From positions 1-64,000 of the IMG/VR virus record IMGVR_UViG_3300000553_000004: a DNA stretch of 64,000 nt, one strand, 5' to 3'. Position 1 is the first letter of the stretch. The number at the start of each line of letters is the position of its first letter. Below the pieces are notes generated by a model, which had not been told where the DNA came from, did not search any database, and worked only from the letters and a program-made list of their open reading frames with translations. Of the stretch, positions 17,393 through 50,210 are shown piece by piece. The position numbers and the translations under genes were made by a program.

Positions 17393-17447
17393 AATGATAT
17401 AAATATCAAGTTGTAAGCAGAACATATAGAAAACATGAAATAATAAT

Positions 17448-34990: not shown

Positions 34991-35252
34991 ATTCGTAGAA
35001 TTTGTTTGGAAGTTTCCAATTGATAAAGTCAATGCTAAAACAAAATTTCCATTTGATTCAAAATTAGTGACCATATTACTTGTTTGTAATATTGATAAAG
35101 ATGGTAATGTGATTGTCGAACCGTGGTTGCATGATGAATTTGATAATCGTGATATGTATGTCACAAATGACGTAGGTATAAACGATTTTATTTCAAATGA
35201 AGAATTGGAACAATTGAAGATGGATACAATAAAATATTTGAAAATTTCCTAA
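34941..35252 (+). CDS. hypothetical protein
   Basis: 103 aa ORF. Confidence 0.55.
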   Translation: MNIPQTQHLHSQSFNSKFVEFVWKFPIDKVNAKTKFPFDSKLVTILLVCNIDKDGNVIVEPWLHDEFDNRDMYVTNDVGINDFISNEELEQLKMDTIKYLKIS

Positions 35253-35283
35253 CGTTTTATATCCTAACGATATACTTATTACT

Positions 35284-35439
35284 ATGGGTCGCAATAAATT
35301 AAACCGAACGGATGAAGAAATACGAGAACAAAATCGTATTCGTCAAAGGAGATTTTATGACAAGCATAGTAAACGAATCAGAAAAGAAAAACTTAGAAAA
35401 TATTACGAAAAAAAGGAAGTATCCAATAAAGGTAGTTGA
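35284..35439 (+). CDS. 51 aa basic helical peptide overlapping homing endonuclease
   Basis: MGRNKLNRTDEEIREQNRIRQRRFYDKHSKRIRKE; homolog at 49469; not in ORF track. Confidence 0.7.
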   Translation: MGRNKLNRTDEEIREQNRIRQRRFYDKHSKRIRKEKLRKYYEKKEVSNKGS

Positions 35440-36124
35440 CGGAAAGAAAATTTGGTATAAGTTTTGTCCTAATTGTAATAGAGAACAACAATATTCTACT
35501 TTAAGAGCCGCATCACACGCCACGAAGAGAAATAAACAATGTTTGTTTTGTAAAAATAAAGAAGATGGGAATCCATTTTTCGGCAAACACCATACTATAG
35601 AACATAGAGAAAATTTATCTAAAAAACAATTGGTTAGTTGTTCTTATCGTTATAAAAGAGTTGGTAAAAATCCTGATAAAATTAATAAACGATGTAAATT
35701 TTGTGAAAATGAATTTAAAGTTATAAAGTCATTGCATTTACAAAAATATTGTAAATATGAGTGTGCGTTAAAAGATAATTTTGGATTTCAACCATTCAAA
35801 AAAACTAAACCTGAAAGAAAGTTTGAAGAGTGGCTTAAAATCAACAATATAGATTATAAATCATCATTTCAGTTAAAAGGAAAATTATACGATTTTTATA
35901 TACCATCTAAAAATATATTGGTTGAAATTGATGGAATTTATTGGCATGGAAAAAATTTAAAATATGATGAACTGAATGAAACACAAAAAAGAAATAGAAT
36001 TAATGATAATAGAAAAACTTGTATTGCCAAGGAAAATGGTTATACTCTGATAAGAATTTGGGAAGATGAAATAGAGGACAAAACGTGTATCAAAATATTT
36101 ACATTTCAAGAAAAGATAATATAG
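35312..36124 (+). mobile_element. homing endonuclease (Zn-finger + DUF559-like PD-(D/E)XK)
   Basis: CPNC, CLFC, CKFC; YDFYI..LVEIDGIYWH; overlaps polymerase start. Confidence 0.8.
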
Positions 36125-38826
36125 TTCATTTGTGGGATGATATGGCGGGATATCGGACGTTCCCATATGAAAAGTATGCTTATAAACGTCATCCAGGCGG
36201 CAACTTCAAATCTCTTTATGGAGATGAATTAGTCAGAGTTGTAAATTATAATGATAAAGACTCTAATCTATTTGAGTCTGATGTTCCCGCTGACATGCGT
36301 GTATTATTAGATTATTATCCCGATTCAGACGAACCATCTACAGGAAATAAAATAGGCGTGATTGATATCGAAATATCTACCGAAGGTGGATTCTCTACTC
36401 CTGACTTGGCAGAACAGCCTATTACAAGTATATCTCTTTACGACTTTGTTACTAGAACGTGTTTCGTTTTTGTTATTGATAAAGAGAGTAAGGTAGAAAA
36501 GAACGAACTAGAAGTAGACCCTTGGTTGCCTTTGGAATGGAAGGTACAGAGTGAAGAAGAAAATAAAAAAATCAAAATCGTCACATTGCCTTATGATAAT
36601 GAAGATGATATGTTGATGAGTTTCATGGATAAATGGCAAGAATGTGCATTTACGATTGTGACAGGATGGAATGTCGACTTCTTCGATATGCCGTATCTAT
36701 ACAACCGCTTGAAGAAGTGTTTGACGGCCAAGGCAGCTAAATGTCTATCTCCGATTGGAGTTTGTTATCTAAATACCCATAGTAAAAAATTGACTATCGC
36801 CGGTGTATCCGTTATGGATTACATCTTATTGTATAAGAAATTCTTGGCTGGTAAAATGGAACCTACTTGGGCATTAGGGCCGATTGGAAAAAAGGTCGTC
36901 GGATTTGGTAAGGTTCAATACCACGGAAATCTAAATGATTTATACAAAACGGATATTAAAAAATTCTTAGAATACAACATTACAGACGTAAAGATTGTAG
37001 TCGCTATTGATGTTAAATTGAAGTTGATTGACCTCTATAGAACCATCTGTCACGTAGGTCATGTTCCATACGAGAGTTTCCATATGCCTGCGAGATATCT
37101 CGACGGCGCATCATTAATGTATCTCCATAGAAACGGCGTCATAGCTCCGAACAAACCGGCTGGTGGACGCGAGGAATATGAGGATAGTATGGAGGATGGT
37201 GAAGAAGGGTTCTCAGGGGCATTTGTTAAAGAACCTGTTCCTGGTAGATATGATTGGGTATTCGATTTGGATTTGACTTCCATGTATCCAAATATCATCA
37301 TTTCTTTAAATATTTCGCCTGAGACTAAGGTCGGTAAAATTATTAAAGCTGAATATAATGATGATTGTAAAGTTGAGAAACGTCGTGGCATCTTAAAAGA
37401 AATCGATGAAATGAAGACGGAGATGAAAGACCGTCTTTGGTCAAGTGAAGATGGTAAGGAAGAATATATTCAACGTCGTTGTCGTGAATTTGATATGGAG
37501 TATCATGTTCGTGAGAAATTGGAAAACTATCATCTTGGAACGACTGAATATAAGAAGGATGAGTTTAGGAATTTAATTAAAGATGCCAATTACTCTCTTA
37601 GTTCTAACGGCGTTCTTTATCGTAGAGATAAGCCCGGAGTTGTACCGACGTTGTTGCAATTATGGTTCCAACAACGTAAGGATATGAGAAAGAAGGCGTC
37701 AGAGTTTAGAAAAGCTGGAAATGTCGAAAAGTATAATTTCTATAATCAACGTCAACAAGTTCAAAAGATTTTGTTGAATTCATTCTACGGTGTATTGGGA
37801 CTTCCGATATTTCGATTCTACGATGTAGATAACGCCGAGGCTGTAACCATGTCCGGCGTCGATATCATTCAGACCACATCCAAAGCCATCAACATTTATT
37901 ACAAGAATGCGTTGGAAGTTGAGACTGGTGACTGGGTAATCTACAGTGATACCGACTCTTGTTTCGTCGATGCCGTTCCGATTATCAAAAAGAGATTTCC
38001 TGATTTGGATTTCAATAATGACGATGAAATGACAAAGGCAATTATGAGTGTCACCACGGAAGTACAGACCTACGTTAATAAATTCTATGACATTATGGCA
38101 AAGAGATTCTTTAATCTTGATGCTCATACATTTGATGCCAAACAGGAAGTTATTAGTAAGTCGTCCTTTTGGTTGGCTAAGAAACGGTATGCTCAGTGGA
38201 TTATTCACAAAGAAGGACATCTATTAGAAAAACCGGAATTAGAAGTAAAGGGTATTGACGTTGTTAGAACTTCATTCCCAATGGCATTTCGTAAATTCAT
38301 GGATTTATTTCTAAGAAAGTTATTAACTTCCGCCCCAAAATCGGAAATAGATGCAATGATTTTAAAAGTAAAGGAAGAAGTTAAAACTTTGCCTGTTCTT
38401 GAAATAGCGAAAAATACATCGGTGAAATTTGTAAGTCAAGACGGAACTAAAAATTATAATCCGGAAAGTAGAAGACCATTACACTTTGAAAGTAAAACTC
38501 CCGCCCAAGCCAAAGCGGCATTGGCCTATAATGATTTAATTGTTAAGATGGGATTAGAAAAAACATGTGAACCAATCTATCATGGAAGTAAAATTAAATG
38601 GGTATATCTTCAAGACAATGGATATGGACTCGATGCTATCGCTATGAAAGGTGATGGTAATGACGCAGACGAATTATTAAAATTCATAGATACTCACGTC
38701 GATAGAAAGAAAATGTTTGAAAATGAACTCAAGAGTAAGTTATCTGACTTCTACGATGTTTTGAGATGGGCATTCCCCAACCCATCCGTCGCAACGGCTT
38801 CAAACTTTTTTGATTTTGGTGGATGA
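36085..38826 (+). CDS. polB: family B DNA polymerase with 3'-5' exonuclease (T4 gp43-like)
   Basis: DIE, GWNVDFFD, YNITD; DLTSMYP, KILLNSFYG, YSDTDS, KKRY, KGID. Confidence 0.96.
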   Translation: MYQNIYISRKDNIVHLWDDMAGYRTFPYEKYAYKRHPGGNFKSLYGDELVRVVNYNDKDSNLFESDVPADMRVLLDYYPDSDEPSTGNKIGVIDIEISTEGGFSTPDLAEQPITSISLYDFVTRTCFVFVIDKESKVEKNELEVDPWLPLEWKVQSEEENKKIKIVTLPYDNEDDMLMSFMDKWQECAFTIVTGWNVDFFDMPYLYNRLKKCLTAKAAKCLSPIGVCYLNTHSKKLTIAGVSVMDYILLYKKFLAGKMEPTWALGPIGKKVVGFGKVQYHGNLNDLYKTDIKKFLEYNITDVKIVVAIDVKLKLIDLYRTICHVGHVPYESFHMPARYLDGASLMYLHRNGVIAPNKPAGGREEYEDSMEDGEEGFSGAFVKEPVPGRYDWVFDLDLTSMYPNIIISLNISPETKVGKIIKAEYNDDCKVEKRRGILKEIDEMKTEMKDRLWSSEDGKEEYIQRRCREFDMEYHVREKLENYHLGTTEYKKDEFRNLIKDANYSLSSNGVLYRRDKPGVVPTLLQLWFQQRKDMRKKASEFRKAGNVEKYNFYNQRQQVQKILLNSFYGVLGLPIFRFYDVDNAEAVTMSGVDIIQTTSKAINIYYKNALEVETGDWVIYSDTDSCFVDAVPIIKKRFPDLDFNNDDEMTKAIMSVTTEVQTYVNKFYDIMAKRFFNLDAHTFDAKQEVISKSSFWLAKKRYAQWIIHKEGHLLEKPELEVKGIDVVRTSFPMAFRKFMDLFLRKLLTSAPKSEIDAMILKVKEEVKTLPVLEIAKNTSVKFVSQDGTKNYNPESRRPLHFESKTPAQAKAALAYNDLIVKMGLEKTCEPIYHGSKIKWVYLQDNGYGLDAIAMKGDGNDADELLKFIDTHVDRKKMFENELKSKLSDFYDVLRWAFPNPSVATASNFFDFGG

Positions 38827-38897
38827 TAATATCTATATATCCGTTGTAGAAATGTATAAAGTTGCCCAATTGTAATAGTTCGATATAATTCATACTT

Positions 38898-39140
38898 ATG
38901 AAATCCAAAGAGACGACATTCACCATAACTTGTACAATGAAAACTCGTTGGGTTCCACATTTCCTCAGTATGTTAAAATATATGCAACAATTGGGTAATC
39001 TTGGTGGTTCTAGAAAAGTAGCATTATATTCAGATGGTGATGGAGATTTCAGACCAAAATTTCAATGGGGCACAACTCTATCTGATGTTGCCGTTCCCAT
39101 AGAGGACAATCGAGGAAACCGATTGTATGACGCCGGATAA
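38898..39140 (+). CDS. hypothetical protein
   Basis: 80 aa; DGDGDFRP motif. Confidence 0.6.
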   Translation: MKSKETTFTITCTMKTRWVPHFLSMLKYMQQLGNLGGSRKVALYSDGDGDFRPKFQWGTTLSDVAVPIEDNRGNRLYDAG

Positions 39141-39151
39141 AAAACCAAATT

Positions 39152-39691
39152 ATGACACAAAAAAAGAAGGGTAAAGTATTTAACTTCAAAGACCAGATGC
39201 GCATAGGCGACATCGGAGAATCTGATTTTATTAAAATATACGAAAAACTGAAACCAGTTAAGAGTATAAAGGATAGAAAGATTGATTTTACTCTAAATAA
39301 TGGCAAAACCGTAGAATTAAAGACGGATAGTTATTCTATGGAAAAGACTATAAATTTCTTTATGGAAAAGAATACTATATTGCCTGATGCTAGGGAACTA
39401 TTAGGTGGCCCATGGCGTTCTCATGACCATAAGATAGATTATTTTGTATATTATTACATGAATGACAAAGTGTTTTTTTGGTTTGAACCTAAATCCCTTT
39501 GTAAATTTTTAGACAAGTATATAAAATCTAATAAGATTAAACCTATTTCAATTCCAAACCGAGACGGTAAGGGAAACATCTTTCGTTCATATGGATATAA
39601 AATTCCACGTGCGGATATAGTTGATGTCCTTTTACGAGAACATAAGATTGAGATAGATTATAAAATTGAAGAGAAGAAAAAAGAATCTTGA
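39152..39691 (+). CDS. PD-(D/E)XK-like nuclease
   Basis: GDIGE, IDF, VELKTD. Confidence 0.6.
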   Translation: MTQKKKGKVFNFKDQMRIGDIGESDFIKIYEKLKPVKSIKDRKIDFTLNNGKTVELKTDSYSMEKTINFFMEKNTILPDARELLGGPWRSHDHKIDYFVYYYMNDKVFFWFEPKSLCKFLDKYIKSNKIKPISIPNRDGKGNIFRSYGYKIPRADIVDVLLREHKIEIDYKIEEKKKES

Positions 39692-39724
39692 CTTTTTACA
39701 TGATGGGGTAGATAATACCTTATT

Positions 39725-40285
39725 ATGGCAGATGAAATTCAACCAGTTCAAAGTAGATTTAAAATTTCATATAAATCTATTTTCGACATTCCCGCCGACG
39801 CATACGTAAATACAATAAATTGTATTGGTGTGATGGGAGCCGGAATAGCTTTAGAATTTAAGAATCGTTACCCGAAGATGTATGGACATTATAAAAATCA
39901 ATGTTCCACACATGCAATTCGTCCTGGCGATTGTTACGCATATCATGAGAATGGGTTATATCTTCTTGGCCTTGCGGTAAAGGACGACTGGCGTCACTGG
40001 AGTACACTAGAATGGTTGGAATCATCAATCAAGTCACTTAAACTAGTTTTATTGGAAAATGATATCAAATCTGTCAATCTTCCTTTGCCGGGTGGAAAAA
40101 ATGGAAGACGTGGGCCTTTCGGCAAAGTACCAGGATTTACTCCGCCACCTGAAAGGGAAGATATAAAAGTTCTCGTTGGAAAAGAATTAATACCATTCGC
40201 AGATAAATTCGGTATTGATATAACTCTCTGTTTACCGGATGAGGCTCCCAAAATAGCTCAGATGACATTGGAAAATTTCATGTGA
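39725..40285 (+). CDS. macrodomain (DarG/Poa1-like ADP-ribose hydrolase)
   Basis: DAYVNTINCIGVMGAGIALEFK.RYP; own TTGACT-17-GATAAT promoter. Confidence 0.85.
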   Translation: MADEIQPVQSRFKISYKSIFDIPADAYVNTINCIGVMGAGIALEFKNRYPKMYGHYKNQCSTHAIRPGDCYAYHENGLYLLGLAVKDDWRHWSTLEWLESSIKSLKLVLLENDIKSVNLPLPGGKNGRRGPFGKVPGFTPPPEREDIKVLVGKELIPFADKFGIDITLCLPDEAPKIAQMTLENFM

Positions 40286-40358
40286 GTGACTTTTAAAATA
40301 AATAGACAAGATATACGTGGTGTGATATAGTTCATAAACAATTAACAAATACAAAAAT

Positions 40359-41111
40359 ATGGAAAAGAAAAAAATCGAAACATTTATAAAAAAGTACAAT
40401 TTAGGTGGAACTATTAACTCCGTCATTTGGACTAATGACAAAGAAGACTTAACGGTAACTGCTATTACGTCTGATAAAAAATTATTCGCCTCTGTCCAAT
40501 TAGAAAAGGGCGCCGTCGGATTTATTGATGGAGTAGAAGTCGGAGTTCTCACCACGGAACAACTTAAAAAGATGTTGACTCCATTGGAAGATAATATTTC
40601 TTTGACATTGGATGTAGATGAAAACGATAAAACGAGAGTTCGACAAATCCTACTCGGTGACACTAAGATTGATTCCAACTACGTGACATCAGAGCCGACC
40701 GCTATTGATGGAGTCCCTTCGATGAAATCAATTCCGCCGTTTGAAGTTGAGATTGTACTTGATGAAACATTTATCACGGCATTTAATAAATCATTCTCGG
40801 CATTGGGTGATGATGGAACCCTTTTTACACTCATCATGAGTAATAAGAAGAAGACATTGCAATTGGTTTTGGGATATAAACAAAATCTATCAAATCGTAT
40901 CGCCATCGATGTCACGACGGTCGCCGGTAAAGATTCTGTAAAGAATCCAATCAGCTTCACGGCTAAAAGTTTAAAGGAAATTCTCTCCGCAAATGGTGAA
41001 GTTGAAAATCCTGTATTAAAGGTGTCAGAAGCTGGATTGGCTAGCATTTCTTACAATAAAGATGGATTCAAGAGTCAATATTACTTGGTAAAAGTTGATG
41101 TTGAAGATTAA
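40359..41111 (+). CDS. DNA polymerase sliding clamp (gp45-like)
   Basis: 250 aa beta-rich, directly upstream of clamp loader; FIKKYNLGG N-terminus. Confidence 0.75.
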   Translation: MEKKKIETFIKKYNLGGTINSVIWTNDKEDLTVTAITSDKKLFASVQLEKGAVGFIDGVEVGVLTTEQLKKMLTPLEDNISLTLDVDENDKTRVRQILLGDTKIDSNYVTSEPTAIDGVPSMKSIPPFEVEIVLDETFITAFNKSFSALGDDGTLFTLIMSNKKKTLQLVLGYKQNLSNRIAIDVTTVAGKDSVKNPISFTAKSLKEILSANGEVENPVLKVSEAGLASISYNKDGFKSQYYLVKVDVED

Positions 41112-41150
41112 TAATTTGTTCGACGGTAAACACACACAAAAAAGGAAAAC

Positions 41151-41315
41151 ATGAGTAATACAAATAAAGTATATGGTCTGTTCTATAAAGACCACGGAAA
41201 TTGGAGAACGGCTAATAATAACGTTTATACGTTACAAACCGCCCGTTCTACTAAGACAAAAGTCGCTAAGACTTTGAAGAGCCGTGTAATTATTCGCAGA
41301 GTTATATTCGCCTAA
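41151..41315 (+). CDS. small basic protein (54 aa)
   Basis: AAGGA RBS, MSNTNKVYGLFYK...; not in ORF track. Confidence 0.55.
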   Translation: MSNTNKVYGLFYKDHGNWRTANNNVYTLQTARSTKTKVAKTLKSRVIIRRVIFA

Positions 41316-41329
41316 TAAAAAGAAACGAT

Positions 41330-42310
41330 ATGGACTTCATTGAAGAGAGCAGAAAACCAAAGAAAGACCATTCACTGTGGGTAGAAAGGTATAGACCTTC
41401 CACTATGGACAGGTATATTGGTAATGATAGTGTAAAGGAGACATTTTCGCAGTTCATAAAGAAAGGCGATATCCCCCACGTTCTTCTGTTCGGCCCCGCC
41501 GGTACAGGTAAAACTTCGTTGGCAAAACTTTTAACAAAGAACATTAACTGTGATGTGATGTATATAAACGCATCCGACCAGAATAGTGTTGACGATGTTA
41601 GAGTTAAGATGAAGAATTACGCCTGTTCGGCGGGCTTCAAACCATTAAAAGTAATCATTCTCGATGAGGCTGATAGATTGTCACCTGAGGCGCAAGGCGC
41701 TTTAAGAAATATGACAGAAACCTATTCCGCCCATACGAGATTCATTTTAACGTGTAATTACGTGGAAAAAATTATAGCTCCATTGTCTTCAAGGATGCAG
41801 ACGTTTGAAATAAAGCCGGTATCAAAGAAGGATGTGGCATTAAGGTTGGTAGAGATTTTACAGATTGAAAAGGTATCATTCACACAGGAAGATGTCATTT
41901 TCATTGTAAATACATACTATCCTGATATAAGAAAGGTAATCAACTTTGCCCAACAATCATCGATAGAAACTACTGATGATGAAGGCAATGTATCATTGAA
42001 AATTAAGATTTCCAAAGAAAATGCAGTAGAGACTGATATGTTGAATCGACTTACCGATTTGTTAAAAACTCCACAGAAAGCCGGAGTATTTGATGAGATT
42101 CGACAACTCACTACGGAATTCGATTCATCATCGTTGGAAACGGTCGTTCATCATCTTTTCGAGAAGGTAGACGATTATGCTAAAGGTAAGGAAGCATTAA
42201 TTATATATGAATTAGGTGAACTTAACTGGCAAATGCAGCTAGTTATACCAAAGGTCAGGGACATAACGTTTCTGGCGTGTATTTACAAAATACTCAAACA
42301 TTTAAAATAA
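41330..42310 (+). CDS. clamp loader large subunit (RFC/gp44-like AAA+)
   Basis: WVERYRP, GPAGTGKT, INASD, LDEAD, LTCNY. Confidence 0.93.
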   Translation: MDFIEESRKPKKDHSLWVERYRPSTMDRYIGNDSVKETFSQFIKKGDIPHVLLFGPAGTGKTSLAKLLTKNINCDVMYINASDQNSVDDVRVKMKNYACSAGFKPLKVIILDEADRLSPEAQGALRNMTETYSAHTRFILTCNYVEKIIAPLSSRMQTFEIKPVSKKDVALRLVEILQIEKVSFTQEDVIFIVNTYYPDIRKVINFAQQSSIETTDDEGNVSLKIKISKENAVETDMLNRLTDLLKTPQKAGVFDEIRQLTTEFDSSSLETVVHHLFEKVDDYAKGKEALIIYELGELNWQMQLVIPKVRDITFLACIYKILKHLK

Positions 42311-42320
42311 GAAAACAATT

Positions 42321-42569
42321 ATGGAACTACCAAAAAGAATGCCGGAAAAGATGGAACATCGTAGAATTCTCGGAGAATTTTATGATATCAACAAAAACAA
42401 ACAATGGTTCAATAGAGCCGAACTCGTTGAATTACACCCAAGTCACATGAAGCCTACGATTGAAATTTATTGTGATTATAATCCAGTCTTGGAGATGAAA
42501 GAAATTCTTCAATTCGCCGGTAATTATAATATCGCCATCGAAGTCTTGGCTCGGTCACATCAGGGTTAA
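42321..42569 (+). CDS. hypothetical protein
   Basis: 82 aa ORF. Confidence 0.55.
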   Translation: MELPKRMPEKMEHRRILGEFYDINKNKQWFNRAELVELHPSHMKPTIEIYCDYNPVLEMKEILQFAGNYNIAIEVLARSHQG

Positions 42570-42577
42570 GTTAAAAT

Positions 42578-43117
42578 ATGACTAATTTGTTACATAAGAC
42601 TAGAGTCTATTTGGTTGGTCAGATGCAATATATGGACGGGTCTTCGTGGAGAGATACGGTATCAAAATCATTAAGTGATATTGGTGTTGTAGTATTTAAT
42701 CCATATAACCATCCATTTGTTAATTCTACCAAGGAAGATAATGATGCTAGAACGAAGCTTGGTCAATTAATTAAAGATAAAAATTACGATGAGGTTACTG
42801 ATGTTGTTAAGAAAATCAGAGCCGAAGATTTACGATGTGTAGATTTATGTGATTTTATCTTTTGTTATATAAATCCAAAATATAATACTTGCGGGACGTG
42901 GGAAGAGTTATTTTGGGCTAACAGAATGAAAAAGCCAATATTCCTATGTATTGAGGGCGGGAAAGATGCATGTCCGTTATGGATGTATGGTGTTTTACCT
43001 CATAAATACATTTACTCATCGATAGATGATGCCTTGACGGTCATACATGATATAAATCTAGGTAATAAAGTGTTAGATTCTGATAGATGGAGACTTTTGC
43101 GAGAAGAGTTTCGTTAA
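42578..43117 (+). CDS. nucleoside 2-deoxyribosyltransferase-like protein
   Basis: VYLVG, FNP, EDL..V..CD, GTWEEL..A. Confidence 0.75.
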   Translation: MTNLLHKTRVYLVGQMQYMDGSSWRDTVSKSLSDIGVVVFNPYNHPFVNSTKEDNDARTKLGQLIKDKNYDEVTDVVKKIRAEDLRCVDLCDFIFCYINPKYNTCGTWEELFWANRMKKPIFLCIEGGKDACPLWMYGVLPHKYIYSSIDDALTVIHDINLGNKVLDSDRWRLLREEFR

Positions 43118-43123
43118 TTACAC

Positions 43124-43154
43124 AAAACCGACATTAAACGATGTCGGTTTTTTT
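43124..43154 (+). terminator. intrinsic terminator
   Basis: AAAACCGACAT / ATGTCGGTTTT + T-tract. Confidence 0.8.
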
Positions 43155-43200
43155 CTGCATCTGTATAAGGTTTCTTTTGTTTATCCACTATTTATACGGT

Positions 43201-43902
43201 ATGGCAAAAGAAACAATCATAGAAAATAGTTTTGAGGGTGGCCCTGGCGGTGGCGGCAGTATGAATTATGGTGGTTCCTATGGAACTCCTAATAGTAGTA
43301 CCCAAGACATGTCTAAGTTTTCTTCTTCCGATAAGACTACCAACCATATGGCGTCTAATACGGAATCAACGTCATCTGCTATGATGCAACCGCCTGACCG
43401 TCCTGATAGAATCGGTAGAAATTCAAATACTGTGAGTAATACACCGGACACAGGAACGACGGTAAAACTAACCAAACCCAACACCATCAGTCCTGATACG
43501 GCCTATGATGTCCAGAAGTCTCAGAAACCGTTAGACCCTGAGAAACAACTTGACCCACAAGTCGACCAGATTTTTAAAAAGAAACAAACTCCTTCTCCTG
43601 ATGAGATTATGTCTGCTCTTCAATATGAATTGGGTAATATGGTTAAAAAAGATAAATTTATAGCGAAACAAACGGTTCTCAATAATATGAAGACCGACCC
43701 ACATTATTATAGTAGGCTTGATATGTTAAACATTGATGATAAAAAAATGAAAATACCGGAAACAGTAAATGAAGACACATTCTCAAAAACTAAAGCAGTT
43801 CTTGATGAAATGATAGCCAATAAAAAGAAATCGGTGTGTATAGCCGAAACTCCTGAGATAAATAAAATATTTAAAGATTTATACAATAGACGACGTGGTT
43901 AA
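43201..43902 (+). CDS. hypothetical, probable virion-internal protein
   Basis: Start MAKETIIE at 43201, 4 nt after CTATTTATA; low complexity. Confidence 0.65.
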   Translation: MAKETIIENSFEGGPGGGGSMNYGGSYGTPNSSTQDMSKFSSSDKTTNHMASNTESTSSAMMQPPDRPDRIGRNSNTVSNTPDTGTTVKLTKPNTISPDTAYDVQKSQKPLDPEKQLDPQVDQIFKKKQTPSPDEIMSALQYELGNMVKKDKFIAKQTVLNNMKTDPHYYSRLDMLNIDDKKMKIPETVNEDTFSKTKAVLDEMIANKKKSVCIAETPEINKIFKDLYNRRRG

Positions 43903-43910
43903 TTTGATAT

Positions 43911-44549
43911 ATGAAGATTAAATCTTTAATACCAACCGCGATGTTGGAGAATTTAGTTCCTTATGATAAAAGTAAGGATACCACCGTAGTTGATACGAAG
44001 GGTGATTATAAAATCTATGCTAGAGGTATAGATGATTCCGGTTCTGTAAAGAAATATGATAATTTAGAAGATGTTGTTAGATTTCTTAAACCTAGAGATA
44101 GTGGTCCAGAATATAGGAGAAATGGCGGATTACAAGATGAATATACTCAATATGCATTTGAAGGATTCGATTGGTCTGATATATTAGATGGGCCGCCTGC
44201 CGACCATAATACAAAATATAAGATTCATTTGAGGGATTTGCCTTTAAAGTTGAACTGGGTCCATAAAAAAATGGATTATAGTGATAAATGGGACCCCAAG
44301 AGTACGCCCGATAGCGGGCCTTATACTGATATGTGGAGTGGATACGAGGGAGGGGATTCTGGATACGATTATACCGGTCAGATATATAGAATTAAATACG
44401 ATGGAGGATACCAAGTTCAAGGAGGCGGGCCAAATGGATTATATGCTAAATATAACACCGTCAAGACATTGGAAGATGCTAAAAAACAGGCCGTAGAACT
44501 AACTTTAGCTTACAGAAAACTTCTAAAAGACAAATACGGCGGCCGGTAA
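43911..44549 (+). CDS. hypothetical, probable virion-internal protein
   Basis: MKIKSLIPTAMLE leader. Confidence 0.6.
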   Translation: MKIKSLIPTAMLENLVPYDKSKDTTVVDTKGDYKIYARGIDDSGSVKKYDNLEDVVRFLKPRDSGPEYRRNGGLQDEYTQYAFEGFDWSDILDGPPADHNTKYKIHLRDLPLKLNWVHKKMDYSDKWDPKSTPDSGPYTDMWSGYEGGDSGYDYTGQIYRIKYDGGYQVQGGGPNGLYAKYNTVKTLEDAKKQAVELTLAYRKLLKDKYGGR

Positions 44550-44593
44550 TAAGAAAAAGGGCGATTACCAGTTTAATCGAATATTTATATGTT

Positions 44594-46354
44594 ATGAACT
44601 ATTATCGAGATTTCTTCAAAAATAAAAAGGCTACTGCGAAAGATATTCAAAATCTTCTTCCAGAAGGCGTTACCAACGTAGAATTTAAAAGAGCTATTCT
44701 CATCGAGAATCGAATGACCAACGATATATTTATCGCCGCTAAGATTGCAAGTCGCAATTTAAACGAAGATGTAAACTATTATAAGAAACTATACGAAGAA
44801 TTCGGCGCCGAAGAGGAATCGATAGAAGGAGACATTGAAACTCCGGAATCCGAAGTAGACGTTGCAGATGAATATGATGACAATGATGGACTTCCAAAAA
44901 TGGGTGGCGCTTTAGCAGTTCCTCATCTCGGACAGCCAATCATGATGGGTAAGATTATTCAAGTTGGTGGTATCGGCGGAGGCCCAGCCTCAGGCGAACA
45001 ATCCGGTATGACGGCAGTTCAATCTCCTGGAGATAAAGAACCAGTAACCGCAGGTGGAAAGAAAGTCGATAGTTCTCTCGCATCTAAAACTGTTGGTGGT
45101 GAAGTTGTAGCCGGTGAAGGACAGAAACAAGGTGGATTAAATACTAAAGGAACGATATCTTCTACTAGTAAATTGGCAGAAGGTAAAAAGAGAATCGGTA
45201 AAATCGTAAAAGAAGTATTGAAAGAAATTAAATTTAATAAAGAAACTGGTAAATGGACAAAAATTAATGAAGACGTCAACATGAAAATGGGAGCTTCCTA
45301 CAAGAAAGTTCAGCCAAGAATGTATGATGTCCAGTCGGACGACAGAGCCAGAACAAATCAGTATGAACCAGAAATTACTGAAATGTATGACGAAGAAGAA
45401 GTAACAAAGATGAATGAACGTTATGTTGAATTGGCAAACGAACATCGTAATTTGAATGAATCTGAATTATCAGAAATGAAGACTCTTCGTGAAAAAATCG
45501 ATAGACTTTCTGAAAACAATTGGATTCAAAAAGCAGTGAAACATCCAGGCCGTTGCGCTCACATGGGTAGTCCTGAATGTCCGAAGGGAAGTCCTCAGTA
45601 TAATTTGGCAAAAAGATTTAAAAAGGGAGATATTCACAAAGCCAATGTAAGTGAAGATGGAGAACGAAGTGACCACGAAATAGCTTCCACCGAAACGAAT
45701 CCAAACGATTACGAAAAGTGTGATGGTTGTGGAAAACAAAATTATATGTGTGATTGTCCATCCAAACATGGAGAAGAAGAATATATGGGCCATGATGGGT
45801 TTGGTAAAGAACAGAACGAAAATGAAATGGAACATCCTGATGACGCACGTGAAAGACATCAATTTCAACGTGGTATTGATAGAACCAACCGTAGGAATCC
45901 TCAGAGATATGAATGTCCTACCTGTAAGACTCCGAATGCTTTGAGTCATGACCAGAAACAAAAGGGATATCAATGTAATCGATGCGCCGACTCAGAAGAA
46001 GGGGCATTCCAAGAAAACGTGGACATGAAGATGGGTCCATCTTACAAAACCGTTCAAGATAGAATGTATGACGTTCAATCCGATGACAGAGCCAGAACAA
46101 ATCAATACAATCCTAAATTAAGCGAAGTCGGTGGGGGTGCAACTCAAGATAGTTCTTATAGAACAATTAAAAATGGAAATTTACCACAAGACCCAAAAAC
46201 TCGTCATAAAGGCGACGTGGATGAAGGTAAGGTAAGTAAAGTTTCAAAAACTATATCTAAGGGTCAGAAGCCAAAATCTTCAATGCATGCCCAAAATCTT
46301 AAACATCAGAAGCCAAAAAAGACTTCTAGTGGTGTTCACAAAAGAAAATCTTAA
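44594..46354 (+). CDS. low-complexity multi-segment protein with two Cys clusters and a 34 aa repeat
   Basis: 586 aa; ATATTTATA 4 nt before ATG; many LxE/IxE motifs. Confidence 0.7.
   Translation: MNYYRDFFKNKKATAKDIQNLLPEGVTNVEFKRAILIENRMTNDIFIAAKIASRNLNEDVNYYKKLYEEFGAEEESIEGDIETPESEVDVADEYDDNDGLPKMGGALAVPHLGQPIMMGKIIQVGGIGGGPASGEQSGMTAVQSPGDKEPVTAGGKKVDSSLASKTVGGEVVAGEGQKQGGLNTKGTISSTSKLAEGKKRIGKIVKEVLKEIKFNKETGKWTKINEDVNMKMGASYKKVQPRMYDVQSDDRARTNQYEPEITEMYDEEEVTKMNERYVELANEHRNLNESELSEMKTLREKIDRLSENNWIQKAVKHPGRCAHMGSPECPKGSPQYNLAKRFKKGDIHKANVSEDGERSDHEIASTETNPNDYEKCDGCGKQNYMCDCPSKHGEEEYMGHDGFGKEQNENEMEHPDDARERHQFQRGIDRTNRRNPQRYECPTCKTPNALSHDQKQKGYQCNRCADSEEGAFQENVDMKMGPSYKTVQDRMYDVQSDDRARTNQYNPKLSEVGGGATQDSSYRTIKNGNLPQDPKTRHKGDVDEGKVSKVSKTISKGQKPKSSMHAQNLKHQKPKKTSSGVHKRKS
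45269..46114 (+). repeat. two copies of a 102-nt coding repeat (45269-45370, 46013-46114)
   Basis: EDVNMKMGASYKKVQPRMYDVQSDDRARTNQYEP vs ENVDMKMGPSYKTVQDRMYDVQSDDRARTNQYNP. Confidence 0.9.
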
Positions 46355-46365
46355 GCATTTTCAAT

Positions 46366-48156
46366 GTGTCTAATGACAAATCACAAAAGAAACTGAGTCC
46401 TTATCTTCGTCAAATGGCGATACGAGAGGGACTCAGTTTTAGTGATTATATGGATGATTCGGTTCCCGCCGATGTAAAGCCCGTCTATTCCCTAACTCCG
46501 ATGGAAGAGGATACTTCGTCTGGTAATTTGTATGATGGTTGGTTAGATAAAGATGGGAATTTTATATCAACTAAGGGAGAGAGTCATTTAAGTTGCGCCA
46601 AAGATTATCTAAAATCTAAAAACATAAATTATAGTAAATTTGGTGAATACGGTGAAATGTATAAATTGGGATTTGTACGAGTTAAACCTAATTGGTTTGG
46701 TAAAAAATTATCATTTGAATATTATGGTAATACTCCAACAAATTCACAAATCAGATTCTTAAAAAATTATTGTATAGAGAAGGGTTGGAGATTGATGGAT
46801 GACAGTAAACATGAATACGTCGATTTGAATGAATCTATAAATGAAGACGATTTTCCTACCCAAGCCAAAGATTTATTTAAAGGAATTTGGGAAGACATTC
46901 TTCAAAAAAATGTACAATATTGGTTAGACCCACAGGGTAGATTTAATAAAGCAGGAAATGGCGGGCATCAAGAATGGGCTATGGCTTATCTTGATAAACA
47001 TAAAATACCATATGACTGGACCGACCCATATAGAAACGAACCAAATTCGGAAGGGTTGATGGGCCTTTATCATGCTTTATATGGTAAAAAATTCATGAGA
47101 ATAGCTATTGATAGTAGGGGTATCTATGCTACAAATGACTTAGATTCTCCTAATAATATGCAGATGAGAAATCTTAAAGATAGCGCAATTGAAAGTGATT
47201 TGCCATTGTGGGTTAACGGAAAGAGAGTCGATTTAATGGAAGGCAATCCTACGGATTTAAGTGAGGTCGTAGTAGATTCTGATAATAATACTATAAAACC
47301 ACGCAGTTGTTATTGGTTAGACCCATTCGGAAAATTTAATAAAACCGTACATCATCATACTTGGGCATACAAACATCTCGGAGATATAGATGATTCAGTT
47401 GATGTCTACGATGCTATGTATAAAGCGGGATTTGTTAGAGTAGTCACGTATTCGGATGTCATGTTTTTTGAATATAAGGAAGGACATAAACCGACCAATT
47501 TACAAATGAGAAGTCTCAGAGACGCCGCTATAGAATTTGGATTTACGTTGTACGATTCTACTTCTTTGATATATGTGGATTTAATGGAATCAAAATACGT
47601 AGATAAGGGTAAGAGACAACTATTTATTGAGAGTATGAATCCTGATAACATTGATGAATTTAAGTCTCATTTGGCAAAACTATTTGCATATTTGCAAAAA
47701 GAATTACAATTGAAGACTATTCCGAAGGTAAAACTCATATCGGATGATAAGAATGCTGATAAAATCTTAGGTAAGACGGCTTATTATAATCCCGACGCAA
47801 AGGAGATAGTTTTATACATTACCAGCCGTCATCAAAAAGATATTTTACGTTCGTTCGCACATGAAGTGATACATCATTGGCAACATGAAAATGAAAAATT
47901 ACAAGCAGGTGAATCCGGTACAAAACGAGGCGAAGGAGCCAGCGACCCACAATATGCCCAAAAGAATCCTTGGTTACGTCAAATGGAAAAACAAGCATAC
48001 TTACTCGGTAATATGCTTTTTCGTGACTGGGAAGACCAAAAGAAAGCCAGTGATAAAAAGAGTTGTAAGAGTGGAGATGACAACAAACGTAAATCTAATA
48101 AAGGAGTTGTAGAAAAAACGTCTTTAATTGGAGTTGATTATCCACCGAGGAGATGA
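46366..48156 (+). CDS. protein with three repeated ~90 aa domains and C-terminal HEXXH metallopeptidase-like domain
   Basis: WLDxxGxF..H..A..Y..GF.R repeats; RSFAHEVIH. Confidence 0.75.
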   Translation: MSNDKSQKKLSPYLRQMAIREGLSFSDYMDDSVPADVKPVYSLTPMEEDTSSGNLYDGWLDKDGNFISTKGESHLSCAKDYLKSKNINYSKFGEYGEMYKLGFVRVKPNWFGKKLSFEYYGNTPTNSQIRFLKNYCIEKGWRLMDDSKHEYVDLNESINEDDFPTQAKDLFKGIWEDILQKNVQYWLDPQGRFNKAGNGGHQEWAMAYLDKHKIPYDWTDPYRNEPNSEGLMGLYHALYGKKFMRIAIDSRGIYATNDLDSPNNMQMRNLKDSAIESDLPLWVNGKRVDLMEGNPTDLSEVVVDSDNNTIKPRSCYWLDPFGKFNKTVHHHTWAYKHLGDIDDSVDVYDAMYKAGFVRVVTYSDVMFFEYKEGHKPTNLQMRSLRDAAIEFGFTLYDSTSLIYVDLMESKYVDKGKRQLFIESMNPDNIDEFKSHLAKLFAYLQKELQLKTIPKVKLISDDKNADKILGKTAYYNPDAKEIVLYITSRHQKDILRSFAHEVIHHWQHENEKLQAGESGTKRGEGASDPQYAQKNPWLRQMEKQAYLLGNMLFRDWEDQKKASDKKSCKSGDDNKRKSNKGVVEKTSLIGVDYPPRR

Positions 48157-48157
48157 T

Positions 48158-48532
48158 ATGCTTCTTGGTGATATTTTAAAACAAATTCTTCGAGAGTGGC
48201 ATGTCCATCATCAATTAGAAAATTATTGGCTTAGTAAAGATGGAAAGGGAGTAAAGGTTAATAATCACGAATCGTATGCTATGCTTCTTTCTAAATTTAT
48301 TTACGAACATCGTGACAAAGCATATGAATGGATGTATCACCAAGGATGGGCTAGAATCATAATAGAAAATGGTGATATGTATATTCAGACCGACTATGAC
48401 AATGCTAAGAACGTAAAGTTAACCCCCGAACAAAAAGATTGGATATTAGGCAAAGTTTATATCTATCCTAAAGATGATAATGGAGAAGAATTAAGAGTTG
48501 TAAACGTATATGGAAAGAGCATCAAATTATGA
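48158..48532 (+). CDS. single-copy homolog of the 46366 repeat domain
   Basis: MLLGDILKQILRE leader; YWLSKDG..H..A..MYHQGWARI. Confidence 0.65.
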   Translation: MLLGDILKQILREWHVHHQLENYWLSKDGKGVKVNNHESYAMLLSKFIYEHRDKAYEWMYHQGWARIIIENGDMYIQTDYDNAKNVKLTPEQKDWILGKVYIYPKDDNGEELRVVNVYGKSIKL

Positions 48533-48915
48533 ATGATACAAATAATCAATTAAGTTTTGAATTTGACGAATACCCTGAAATGCCCAACGTTCTTGGACAA
48601 ATAATTTCTCAAAAAAGTTCCACAGTTATTAAAGACGGTGCTTTTGACCCACATCAATTGATGTTAAAAAAGAAACTAACCGATTCAGGTGAGAGTGTTG
48701 ATTTGACACCAAAACAAAGTTGGCCTGACCAAGATATCAAAGCTTTAGAAGATTTTTGTAAAAAGTATGGCCTTATAGGATTTAATTGTGGTAGAATGTC
48801 GCCTATAGCCGCACTATCTTTATTAAAACAAAAAATGGGTGTGATTGATACTCCTGTAGAAAATAGAGTCACATATTCAGATGTCATGAATAAGAAAATG
48901 CTTCTGAAAGGTTAA
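48529..48915 (+). CDS. hypothetical protein
   Basis: 128 aa ORF. Confidence 0.6.
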   Translation: MNDTNNQLSFEFDEYPEMPNVLGQIISQKSSTVIKDGAFDPHQLMLKKKLTDSGESVDLTPKQSWPDQDIKALEDFCKKYGLIGFNCGRMSPIAALSLLKQKMGVIDTPVENRVTYSDVMNKKMLLKG

Positions 48916-49396
48916 GTTTTGGAGTTTCAAAAATATTGCCAATGATTGTCCAATCTTGACTTATTGATTTCCAATAACTTCCATCGTATAATGATTGTGG
49001 ATTGTGTTCTTCAATTTTACCACATAAAGAGGAAATTAAATCTTTATTTTTAACTCCCCAAGCCAACATAGTTGGTGTATAGAAATCATCACAGTCGTTT
49101 ATTTTATCAAATACCACTTCTCCAATCCAAGTGATAGTTTTTGGTTCTCCTAAAATTGGATTGTTGTAATCACAATGATTGTATGTTTTTCCTACTACAA
49201 CCTTTTCGAATTTGATGATATCACCTTCATAGATTTCTATTTCGTTTTTATTTTTTAAACCTGTATATTGTTGGATAACAGAATCTTTTGGTATGGCTAT
49301 TGTTCTCTCCAATCCAATAATTTCAGTCAAATGCATGTAATAAAATCTATTTGTATTACTATCCCAACACCTAAAATTTAATTCTCTATTTTTCAT
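48884..49396 (-). CDS. YopX family protein
   Basis: LNFRCWD, QQYTGLKNK...EIYEGDI, IIGNIFETP. Confidence 0.85.
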   Translation of the reverse strand: MKNRELNFRCWDSNTNRFYYMHLTEIIGLERTIAIPKDSVIQQYTGLKNKNEIEIYEGDIIKFEKVVVGKTYNHCDYNNPILGEPKTITWIGEVVFDKINDCDDFYTPTMLAWGVKNKDLISSLCGKIEEHNPQSLYDGSYWKSISQDWTIIGNIFETPKLNLSEAFSYS

Positions 49397-49430
49397 GACG
49401 TTTTATTCTATGACATTATATTTATATCAT

Positions 49431-50210
49431 ATGAATGGAGAAATGTCAACAACAAAGGAAAATGTTATATGGGAAGAAAAAAACTTAATCGAACCAGAGA
49501 AGAACTTCTTGAACAACAACGTAGTCGGGCCAAAAGATATTACGAACGAAATAAAGAACGTCTCAACAAAGAAAGTATGGAACGATATTGGGAAAGTAAG
49601 CGGAATATACAAGATAATTAATAAGATTAACGGTAAATATTATGTTGGGTCATCTAACGATTTATTTTATAGAATTAAACATAGACACCTTAATTCGTTA
49701 CTTAAAAATACACACCCAAATAAATATCTTCAAAATGCGTGGAATAAATATGGGTTAGACAATTTTCAATTTATAATTGTTGAATATGTTGAACCACAAA
49801 AATTGTTGGTGATTGAACAGATGTATTTGGATAAAGCGAAAATAAATAAAGATTCTTATAATTTGAGTTTTGATTCCACAAAAGTAGAAATGACAATTGA
49901 AACGAGAAAAAAGATAGGCAATTCTCACAGAGGAAAGTTTGGTGAATTAGCATCACATTATGGAATGTTTCATACAGATGAAACTAAAAATTTAATTAAA
50001 CAAAAAACTATAGAAAATACGCCAAGGGGAAAATTACATCCTTTATACGACCATAGAATTTATAAATTTTATAATAGACAAACAAATGAAACGTTTATAG
50101 GAACTCAAAATGAATTCTATAAAAGATATAAATTGACACAATCTAAAGTAAATTTGGTAGTTAATGGAATAAGAAAATCCCACAAAAATTGGTTGTTGAT
50201 GAATAAATAA
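49431..50210 (+). mobile_element. GIY-YIG homing endonuclease
   Basis: SGIYKIINKINGKYYVG, HPNKYLQNAWNKYG, NUMOD-like HTDETK; start uncertain. Confidence 0.88.
49469..49621 (+). CDS. 50 aa basic helical peptide nested in GIY-YIG ORF
   Basis: MGRKKLNRTREELLEQQRSRAKRYYERNKERLNKE; homolog of 35284. Confidence 0.7.
   Translation: MGRKKLNRTREELLEQQRSRAKRYYERNKERLNKESMERYWESKRNIQDN

What the first reader, a model, noticed from the sequence alone, without database searches (positions are those of the whole stretch)
35272..49621. Shared short basic ORF overlapping two unrelated homing endonucleases in the same relative frame
Seen: 35284-35439 (MGRNKLNRTDEEIREQNRIRQRRFY...) and 49469-49621 (MGRKKLNRTREELLEQQRSRAKRYY...) are clear homologs. 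Each overlaps the 5' end of a nuclease ORF of a different family (DUF559-like and GIY-YIG), and in both the nuclease lies in the +1 frame relative to the peptide, with that frame open through most or all of the overlap. At 35284 the ATG lies 3 nt after the late-type motif. Inference: a portable regulatory/targeting module for mobile nucleases: +1 frameshift fusion giving an N-terminal DNA-binding helix, translational coupling that throttles a toxic nuclease, or a small inhibitor. Both are missed by the ORF track.
Basis: partly seen in the sequence, partly recalled or inferred. Interest (0 to 1): 0.7.

Follow-up and report, generated by a model that had tools for sequence, protein, structure and literature searches.

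The report
Small basic gene nested in homing endonucleases
A conserved gene for a ~50-residue, very basic, helical protein sits inside the first codons of mobile phage nuclease genes of at least three unrelated families, always one base out of frame with the nuclease, and the evidence favours two separately started overlapping genes over a frameshift fusion.

Summary
The 215-kb freshwater phage genome holds six copies of the peptide gene. Each lies over the 5' end of a homing-endonuclease ORF (four GIY-YIG, one DUF559/Vsr-like, one HNH), and the nuclease is always in the +1 frame. In 80 loci from uncultivated phages, all but one of about 62 out-of-frame nucleases are in the +1 frame. The peptide frame is under strong purifying selection (omega about 0.1). 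The +1 frame over it is almost free in sequence (omega about 0.6) but strongly depleted of stops (28 seen, at least 53 expected). All 60 long +1 ORFs have their own ATG: 43 lie 5-77 nt upstream of the peptide ATG and 17 lie inside the peptide ORF. No conserved shift site exists. Rare relatives are in-frame fusions or ATGA-coupled genes. My reading is a portable cassette: a promoter-like element, then two closely spaced start codons in two frames. One gives an unannotated basic single-helix protein; the other gives the nuclease with a dispensable leader. A programmed +1 frameshift is not needed and is not supported. The peptide's biochemical role (nucleic-acid binding, regulator or accessory) is inferred, not shown. 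No Pfam, PHROG or PDB relative was found.

The parts
35247..35269 (+). Direct repeat TCCTAACG x2 at 15-nt spacing, part of the promoter-like element that travels with the cassette
   Evidence: A 15-nt-spaced direct repeat is the best upstream repeat in 30 of 74 loci, against about 5% of shuffles. The box sequence differs between cassette lineages.
35270..35283 (+). -10-like motif (TATACTTATTACT) ending 2-5 nt before the peptide ATG; suggests a leaderless or near-leaderless mRNA (inferred)
   Evidence: In most loci the first ATG lies 5-8 nt after a TATTTAT or TATACT-type motif.
35284..35439 (+). Peptide gene A (51 aa, basic, predicted single long helix)
35345..35352 (+). Shine-Dalgarno-like AAAGGAGA, 4 nt before the +1-frame ATG at 35357; it is encoded by the conserved RRF codons of the peptide
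   Evidence: The homologous locus L063 has its only +1 ATG at the same offset (+73).
35312..36124 (+). Nuclease A ORF (DUF559/Vsr-like, with Zn-finger-like CxxC motifs) in the +1 frame. Candidate starts are 35312 and, more likely, 35357. Its 3' end overlaps the listed start of the DNA polymerase ORF (GTG at 36085).
49395..49414 (+). Direct repeat ATGAC x2 at 15-nt spacing (promoter-like element)
49419..49427 (+). -10-like motif TATTTATAT, 3 nt before the first ATG (49431), which is in the nuclease frame
49431..50210 (+). Nuclease B ORF (GIY-YIG with a NUMOD3-like motif) in the +1 frame. Likely starts are 49431 or 49443. The first ~55-58 codons are a leader that overlaps the whole peptide gene; GIY begins at 49602.
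   Evidence: PHROG homing-endonuclease profiles begin at the GIY motif, not at the leader.
49469..49621 (+). Peptide gene B (50 aa), nested in the nuclease B ORF

Best explanation
This is a portable two-gene homing-endonuclease cassette. A promoter-like element (two 15-nt-spaced direct repeats plus a TATTTAT-type -10 motif) is followed within a few bases by the first ATG. Two overlapping ORFs are then read from two start codons that lie mostly within 5-45 nt of each other, in different frames. Frame 0 gives a ~50-aa, highly basic protein predicted to be one long alpha-helix. Frame +1 gives the nuclease. The nuclease's first 10-70 codons are a leader with almost no sequence constraint, kept free of stop codons where it crosses the peptide gene. 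Shown: the frame relation, strong purifying selection on the peptide frame, stop depletion and universal ATGs in the +1 frame, and linkage to three nuclease families. Inferred: both proteins are made by independent initiation; because the two start codons lie within roughly one ribosome footprint they compete, which sets a peptide-to-nuclease ratio and limits nuclease dose; and the peptide is a nucleic-acid-binding accessory or regulatory factor for the cassette, acting in trans here and as an N-terminal domain in the rare in-frame fusions. The '+1 only' regularity is largely forced by the peptide's Lys/Arg/Glu/Asn/Tyr composition, which fills the +2 frame with stops (about 4 per locus).
For: Six of six copies in the genome have the nuclease in +1. 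Among 80 IMG/VR loci, 71 have a +1 ORF of at least 100 codons continuing from the peptide end. Of 67 non-redundant loci, 60 (61 with L078) have a +1 nuclease and one has a +2 nuclease. Three more distant homologues and three contigs from metagenome-assembled genomes follow the same rule. The +1 ORFs are GIY-YIG (27), NUMOD3-bearing (30), DUF559/Vsr (3) and HNH types (5). Substitution classes give omega about 0.10-0.12 for the peptide frame and about 0.6-0.7 for the +1 frame; this also holds in loci where the peptide gene lies wholly inside the nuclease ORF. There are 28 +1 stops in 62 loci. Expected numbers are 170 with nuclease codon usage, 61 with the peptides' pooled usage, and 52.8 +/- 3.3 (minimum 44) on within-locus synonymous permutation. 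Leu codons CTT and CTC replace TTA where TTA would create a +1 stop; +2 stops are not depleted. All 60 long +1 ORFs have an ATG: 43 upstream of the peptide ATG, 17 inside the peptide ORF (null 8.3 of 17; none of 2000 resamplings reached 17). L071 has the classical ATGA stop-start overlap, which shows that separate products occur. A peptide-less GIY-YIG gene in the same genome starts right after the same -10-like motif, 11 codons before SGIY. AlphaFold2 predicts one helix over residues 10-48 with pLDDT 89. In-frame fusions to HNH and PD-(D/E)XK nucleases link the peptide functionally to the nuclease.
Against: There are no transcript, ribosome-profiling or proteomic data; no RNA run was listed. 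Start sites and a leaderless mRNA are therefore inferred from sequence only. In one HNH subclass (L088-like) the nuclease frame continues with in-frame repeats of the same YY..NK-type motif, as if the peptide were its displaced first repeat. This keeps a fusion product conceivable. Loci are related by descent, so the counts are not independent events. No binding partner or nucleic-acid target was identified: the complex prediction gave no verdict and fold and profile searches gave nothing. It is unexplained why a long junk leader is preferred (43 of 60 loci) over a start near the peptide's end.
Confidence: 0.6

Rival explanations
1. Recoding fusion: ribosomes that start at the peptide ATG shift +1 (or the RNA polymerase slips on an A run) near the end of the peptide ORF. 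This would give a nuclease with an N-terminal basic helix, while the unshifted peptide acts as a regulator, as in IS1/IS3 OrfA-OrfAB.
For: The +1 relation is constant. In-frame fusions of the same domain to HNH and PD-(D/E)XK nucleases exist (P0044, P0142, L007). A runs are present: A8 at 35407-35414 at the A junction, and A7 at codons 3-5 in most loci. L088-type nucleases continue with the same kind of repeat in the +1 frame.
Against: There is no conserved shift site, and the A8 run at locus A is absent from its homologue L063. In some GIY-YIG loci (L049, L056, L076, L077) the GIY motif is encoded over the peptide's RY(L/W) codons, so the junction would have to move upstream. The peptide stop lies downstream of GIY, so a stop-stimulated shift cannot work. 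All +1 ORFs have their own ATG, and the frame is kept open far upstream, which a late shift would not require. No in-frame fusion with an intact GIY-YIG domain is found among 216 clusters. The composition of the peptide alone explains why only +1 can be open.
Confidence: 0.12
2. The peptide is a protein partner of the nuclease, either an inhibitor or antitoxin-like brake or a required subunit, and binds it directly.
For: The two genes are strictly linked, and domain fusions occur in some relatives, which often marks interacting proteins.
Against: The partners belong to three unrelated catalytic folds with different architectures, so a common protein interface is unlikely. The only shared piece, the +1 leader, is nearly unconstrained (omega about 0.6) and is partly or wholly absent in class I loci.
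Confidence: 0.1
3. Only the act of translating the short ORF matters (a cis-acting regulatory ORF); the peptide itself has no function.
For: The start codons lie within a ribosome footprint of each other. Overlap-based control of homing-endonuclease translation is known in T4 (PMC2988022).
Against: Amino-acid sequence is strongly conserved over deep divergence (omega about 0.1; invariant Y25 and Y40). The same domain is used in frame in other nucleases.
Confidence: 0.05
4. Chance resemblance or an assembly artefact.
For: None found.
Confidence: 0.01

Closest known systems
C (controller) protein and restriction endonuclease gene pairs of type II R-M systems (e.g. PvuII; PMC2997769)
   Same: A small regulator gene lies immediately upstream of, and overlaps, the gene of a potentially toxic nuclease. 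Repeated boxes lie just upstream of the small gene's start, and translation of the two genes is independent.
   Different: C proteins are helix-turn-helix proteins of about 80 aa, and the overlap is about +/-20 nt at the C gene's end. Here the protein is a ~50-aa single basic helix with no HTH. It is often nested wholly inside the nuclease ORF, the nuclease start is often the upstream one, and DNA binding is unproven.
Expression control of T4 seg/mob and intron homing endonucleases (PMC2988022)
   Same: Free-standing GIY-YIG and HNH endonuclease genes have starts that overlap an upstream ORF by 11-24 bp or by ATGA-type overlaps, and late-promoter-proximal starts keep nuclease levels low.
   Different: In T4 the upstream ORF is a resident phage gene, and control is by RNA hairpins or autorepression by the nuclease itself. 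Here a dedicated conserved small gene and its promoter-like element travel with the nuclease, and no convincing RNA structure was found.
IS1/IS3 OrfA-OrfAB transposases (established knowledge, not tested here)
   Same: A small basic N-terminal ORF overlaps a catalytic ORF in another frame in a selfish element, and the small product can act alone.
   Different: Those use -1 frameshifting on an A6G or A7 heptamer, and OrfB lacks its own efficient start. Here the relation is +1, no conserved heptamer lies at the junction, and every catalytic ORF has an ATG.
Endonuclease VII-like HNH proteins with N-terminal YY..NK(E/D)-type helical repeats (phrog_1035; P0142, P0044)
   Same: The peptide is one to two units of the same basic Tyr-containing motif. 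In P0142 three units precede the HNH domain in frame.
   Different: In the window the unit is a separate ORF, out of frame, and is also attached to GIY-YIG and PD-(D/E)XK nucleases. The function of the repeat is not established in either case.

Membership tests
GIY-YIG homing endonuclease (ORF at 49431-50210) | GIY-YIG catalytic domain | tested here: met
   PF01541, 30.7 bits against a cut-off of 22.6. PHROG homing-endonuclease families, E = 3e-31.
GIY-YIG homing endonuclease (ORF at 49431-50210) | Catalytic domain at the very N-terminus of the protein | tested here: not met
   GIY starts about 57 codons after the first ATG, and PHROG profiles begin at residues 51-54 of the 255-aa version. A peptide-less paralogue starts 11 codons before SGIY.
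DUF559/Vsr-like PD-(D/E)XK endonuclease (ORF at 35357-36124) | DUF559/Vsr nuclease domain | tested here: met
   PF04480, 23.1 bits against a cut-off of 20.6. Vsr is below its cut-off. PHROG endonuclease families, E = 6.5e-20.
Programmed +1 ribosomal frameshift (prfB-type) | Conserved shift-prone codon followed by a stop or slow codon at the junction | tested here: not met
   No common motif at codons 37-50 in about 65 loci. The peptide stop lies after the GIY codons, and the junction position varies.
Programmed +1 ribosomal frameshift (prfB-type) | Downstream frame has no start of its own | tested here: not met
   60 of 60 long +1 ORFs have an ATG with no stop before the nuclease domain.
Programmed +1 ribosomal frameshift (prfB-type) | A trans-frame protein is made | not testable with these tools
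   No RNA or proteomic data; no RNA run was listed.
IS1/IS3-type OrfA-OrfB recoding | Catalytic ORF in the -1 frame with an A6G or A7 heptamer in the overlap | tested here: not met
   The frame relation is +1 in all but one out-of-frame locus, and no conserved heptamer lies at the junction.
C-protein-controlled nuclease operon | Small gene upstream of and overlapping the nuclease gene | tested here: met
C-protein-controlled nuclease operon | Helix-turn-helix (Xre-like) regulator | tested here: not met
   AlphaFold2 predicts a single helix over residues 10-48. No Pfam, PHROG or PDB match.
C-protein-controlled nuclease operon | Repeated operator boxes at the promoter that are bound by the small protein | tested here: inconclusive
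   15-nt-spaced direct repeats with lineage-specific sequence are present. Binding cannot be tested here.
T4-type overlap or coupling of a free-standing endonuclease gene with an upstream ORF | Endonuclease start within or next to the end of the upstream ORF | tested here: met
   Locus F, L064 and L073 (ATG at +121), L086, L087, and L071 (ATGA). Not met in the 43 loci where the nuclease ATG lies upstream of the peptide ATG.

The most novel reading that the evidence does not exclude
The peptide is a new kind of portable controller for selfish nucleases. In this reading the basic helix binds the cassette's own lineage-specific 15-nt tandem repeats, or its own 5' mRNA. Together with the dual-frame pair of start codons, this would time and dose nuclease production in any host phage. 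Alternatively, a low-level trans-frame product supplies the nuclease with this DNA-binding helix.
Probability: 0.2. Interest if true: 0.8.

Novelty: new variant of a known kind. Interest (0 to 1): 0.62.

Why it matters
Homing endonucleases are the main selfish genes of large phages, and several have been turned into genome-engineering tools. How free-standing ones control a dangerous enzyme while moving between genomes is known only for a few T4 cases. This finding shows a widespread, unannotated small-protein family: 216 clusters at 50% identity, almost all from viral or metagenomic contigs, named only 'hypothetical protein' by their sources. It is tied to nucleases of three catalytic folds through a conserved dual-coding arrangement. 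It is also a clean natural example of long-term maintenance of two reading frames with very unequal constraint. Annotation pipelines need to handle it: they either miss the peptide or call the nuclease with a wrong start.

Tried and rejected
- Phage GenBank searches with the DNA and with the peptide found nothing.
- Pfam, PHROGs and PDB sequence searches, and Foldseek against PDB, gave no family for the peptide. The ESM Atlas returned only unnamed 'hypothetical' clusters.
- No RNA run was listed for the locus, so transcription, slippage and start sites could not be examined.
- Complex prediction of the peptide with the GIY-YIG ORF returned no verdict (score 0.00). It counts neither for nor against binding.
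- The sigma-70 consensus scan was no better than shuffles. The promoter-like element rests on conservation across loci instead.
- RNA folding gave z = +0.8 at locus B. At locus A it gave z = -2.3, with an 8-bp pairing of the 5' end to CAUAGUAA. No conserved structure is claimed.
- I considered a -1 slip from the nuclease frame into the peptide frame on A_AAA_AAC at peptide codons 3-6. I rejected it as a general mechanism because loci A, D and E lack the run.
- I considered transcriptional slippage on the same A7 run. I rejected it because loci with TTA at codon 6 would terminate at once.
- I did not test covariation between the promoter boxes and peptide residues, because the two are adjacent and co-inherited.
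- The first related-loci run failed because no stretch was conserved enough, and was repeated with closer sequences. That search pattern (MGRKKLN) biases the IMG/VR sample towards one branch of the family. Loci D, E and F and L085-L087 partly offset this.
Full report
**1. The observation**

The window is the first 64 kb of a 214,733-bp, 38% G+C genome. Many freshwater metagenome runs hold its sequence. They are 50% identical over 44 ungapped residues, E = 4e-14. The ORF overlapping the first has DUF559 and Vsr matches; the one overlapping the second has a GIY-YIG domain. Both match PHROG homing-endonuclease families. In both, the nuclease is in the +1 frame relative to the peptide. Contigs assembled from several other public runs are identical across both regions, with no gaps, so a homopolymer or assembly error is excluded.

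**2. Extent within the genome**

A tblastn search and a profile search of all six frames find exactly six copies:
- A: 35284, + strand
- B: 49469, + strand
- C: 210140, - strand
- D: 169806, - strand
- E: 191229, - strand
- F: 206189, - strand

C, D and E precede GIY-YIG ORFs and F precedes an HNH ORF. All six nucleases are in +1. The apparent conservation of the peptide tails (RNIQDN and similar) is simply GIYKII read one base earlier. The genome also has about eight endonuclease-like genes without the peptide. One of them, a GIY-YIG gene at 17362-16793 (-), starts directly after the same -10-like motif and only 11 codons before SGIY.

**3. Extent elsewhere**

- A profile of the 44-residue core found 216 clusters (50% identity representatives) at E <= 0.001 among 1.84 billion proteins. 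Nearly all are 44-60 aa.
- Sources name them 'hypothetical protein', and none has a Pfam domain.
- One genome per species for about 185,000 prokaryote species gave only three hits, all on short contigs of metagenome-assembled genomes.
- A pattern scan of IMG/VR gave 80 loci on contigs of 5-354 kb.
- In 71 of the 80, an ORF of at least 100 codons continues in the +1 frame from the end of the peptide.
- After removing near-duplicates and adding the six own loci there are 67 loci. Of these, 60 (61 with L078) have a +1 nuclease.
- The exceptions are informative. L007/L009 is a full-length in-frame fusion of the peptide to treble-clef zinc fingers and a PD-(D/E)XK domain. L029/L030 is an in-frame remnant. 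L071 has the nuclease in +2, started by an ATGA stop-start overlap. L011 and L051 are decayed.
- Pfam on 61 of the +1 ORFs gives GIY-YIG 27, NUMOD3 30, DUF559/Vsr 3 and HNH families 5.
- Three more distant peptide homologues (L085-L087) and the three contigs from metagenome-assembled genomes also have the next ORF in +1.

**4. Which frames are read**

*Substitutions.* Among pairs 70-97% identical I classed substitutions by their effect in each frame. Changes synonymous in the peptide frame but not in +1 are 3.1-fold over-represented. Changes synonymous only in +1 are at 0.58. This gives omega about 0.12 for the peptide frame and about 0.7 for +1. The result holds where the peptide gene lies wholly inside the nuclease ORF: omega 0.10-0.11 against about 0.6. 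The peptide frame therefore encodes a real, constrained protein.

*Stop codons.* The +1 frame is nevertheless kept open. There are 28 stops in codons 1-41 of 62 loci, and 43 loci are fully open. Expected numbers are:
- 170 stops with nuclease codon usage
- 61 with the peptides' own pooled usage
- 52.8 +/- 3.3 (minimum 44) when synonymous codons are permuted within each locus

The cause is visible in codon choice. Leu6 and Leu13 use CTT and CTC instead of the otherwise dominant TTA, which would create TAA in +1. The +2 frame has about four stops per locus and is not depleted. Any ORF overlapping this Lys/Arg/Glu/Asn/Tyr-rich gene by more than a few codons can therefore only be in +1. The striking frame regularity is thus largely a consequence of composition and is not in itself evidence for recoding.

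**5. Start codons**

Every one of the 60 long +1 ORFs has an ATG with no stop before the nuclease domain. They fall into two classes:
- **Class II (43 loci; B, C, D and E belong here).** The ATG lies 5-77 nt, median about 20 nt, upstream of the peptide ATG. It is usually the first ATG after the -10-like motif.
- **Class I (17 loci; A and F belong here).** The peptide ATG is the first one, and the nuclease ATG lies inside the peptide ORF at +28/+31, +40, +73 or +121.

With synonymous resampling only 8.3 +/- 1.8 of the 17 class I loci would have such an ATG, and none of 2000 trials reached 17. At locus A the ATG at 35357 is preceded by AAAGGAGA. The homologue L063 has its only +1 ATG at the same offset.

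There is no shared shift-prone sequence at the junction. In L049, L056, L076 and L077 the GIY motif is encoded over the peptide's own RY(L/W) codons. The peptide stop always lies after the GIY codons. Among 216 clusters there is no in-frame fusion to an intact GIY-YIG domain. I conclude that the nuclease is started independently and that a programmed +1 frameshift is neither required nor indicated. A minor trans-frame product cannot be excluded. The L088-type HNH nucleases, whose own frame continues with the same kind of Tyr-Tyr/Asn-Lys repeat, keep that idea alive.

**6. The upstream element**

All loci share a promoter-like element. It has a direct repeat of 5-12 nt at 15-nt spacing, which is the best upstream repeat in 30 of 74 loci against about 5% of shuffles. 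A TATTTAT or TATACT-type motif follows, 5-8 nt before the first ATG. The repeated box differs between cassette lineages (TGACG, TTCAC, CTAACG, CCAACG, CTAATG and others), even within one phage. In this genome a related motif is found mainly before endonuclease genes. The short distance to the ATG suggests a leaderless or near-leaderless mRNA. This is an inference; a plain sigma-70 consensus scan is uninformative.

**7. The peptide**

AlphaFold2 with 74 aligned sequences predicts one helix over residues 10-48 (mean pLDDT 89) behind a basic N-terminal arm, MGRKKLNRT. M1, Y25 and Y40 are invariant; G2, R3, K4, K5, L6, N7, R8, E12 and R20 are nearly so. There is no Pfam, PHROG, PDB-sequence or Foldseek relative.

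The motif recurs in frame, up to three times, before the HNH domain of endonuclease VII-like proteins (P0142, P0044; phrog_1035) and before a PD-(D/E)XK nuclease (L007). A very basic Tyr-bearing helix that works as an N-terminal nuclease domain most plausibly binds nucleic acid. Whether the target is DNA in general, the cassette's own repeats or its mRNA is unknown.

**8. Mechanism proposed**

The cassette carries its own promoter-like element and two start codons within about one ribosome footprint, in two frames. One gives the conserved basic helix protein. The other gives the nuclease with a dispensable leader.

- Shown: the anatomy, the selection pattern, and the linkage to three nuclease families.
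- Inferred: the two starts compete, so that nuclease dose is limited; the mRNA is leaderless, which would make expression independent of host-specific ribosome-binding signals; and the peptide has a nucleic-acid-binding accessory or regulatory role.

The closest analogues are:
- the C-protein/restriction-endonuclease overlapping gene pairs (PMC2997769)
- the overlap-based and promoter-based control of T4 seg/mob genes (PMC2988022)
- formally, IS1/IS3 OrfA-OrfB

It is a member of none of these. There is no helix-turn-helix, the small ORF belongs to the mobile element rather than to the host phage, and the frame relation and lack of a heptamer do not fit the IS model.

**9. Verdict**

The 'portable module' reading is supported, the frameshift-fusion reading is not, and the throttle and regulator readings remain open. 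I found no paper describing this family or arrangement. I rate it a new variant of a known kind (control of selfish nucleases by gene overlap and a small co-encoded protein), of moderate to high interest. What the peptide does remains open, and simple reporter, mass-spectrometry and gel-shift experiments can answer it.

Noticed in passing
window 16793-17420 (- strand): A peptide-less GIY-YIG homing-endonuclease gene starts (MNNYCQDIKISGIY...) one base after the same TATTTATATCAT motif. Its first 11 residues resemble the +1-frame junction (C.DI.KISGIY) of the peptide-bearing genes, as if the peptide module were an insertion between the ATG and this segment.
   Followed up: partly
window 35247-35283 and 49395-49430; loci L005-L090 upstream of the peptide ATG: The cassette promoter region carries 15-nt-spaced direct repeats whose box sequence is lineage-specific (TGACG, TTCAC, CTAACG, CCAACG, CTAATG) and differs between cassettes within one phage. 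It is a candidate operator; binding is untested.
   Followed up: partly
window 36085-36124: Nuclease A's ORF ends 40 nt inside the listed start (GTG at 36085) of the family-B DNA polymerase gene, so the cassette sits directly in front of, and overlaps, an essential replication gene.
   Followed up: no
whole genome (G000), e.g. 4154-4405, 77157-77723, 84945-86680, 89781-90155, 134145-134411, 201176-201718: The 215-kb genome carries about 14 endonuclease-like genes (GIY-YIG, HNH, DUF559-like). Only six have the peptide gene.
   Followed up: partly
proteins P0062, P0104, P0140, P0144: These proteins of 187-263 aa have the same N-terminal motif (MPR.K.Y.T.EE...RYY.RN), no nuclease domain and no Pfam match. 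Their composition suggests a non-phage, possibly eukaryotic, origin. Their source was not examined.
   Followed up: no
proteins P0121, P0134, P0137: The peptide core is fused in frame to a ~70-aa Cys-rich (zinc-ribbon-like) domain without a recognisable nuclease.
   Followed up: no
protein P0111: A GIY-YIG domain is followed in frame by the peptide core at its C-terminus. This may be a truncated endonuclease read into the next cassette's peptide gene (tandem cassettes).
   Followed up: no
window 35279-35376: At locus A the 5' end (UUACUAUG, including the peptide AUG) can pair perfectly with CAUAGUAA just downstream of the nuclease AUG at 35357. The fold z-score is -2.3. Conservation in L063 was not checked.
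   Followed up: no
L085:1616-2404: The +1 nuclease ORF behind a distant peptide homologue is interrupted by a single in-frame stop, so gene callers split it in two. It is either a decaying copy or something else.
   Followed up: no
peptide codons 7, 9, 19, 21, 24, 25, 28, 32 across loci: C-ending codons (AAC, TAC, ACC, ATC, TCC) and CGA for Arg are enriched in the peptide gene relative to the nuclease bodies. This may reflect high expression of the peptide or a preference for hydrophilic residues in the +1 leader.
   Followed up: no
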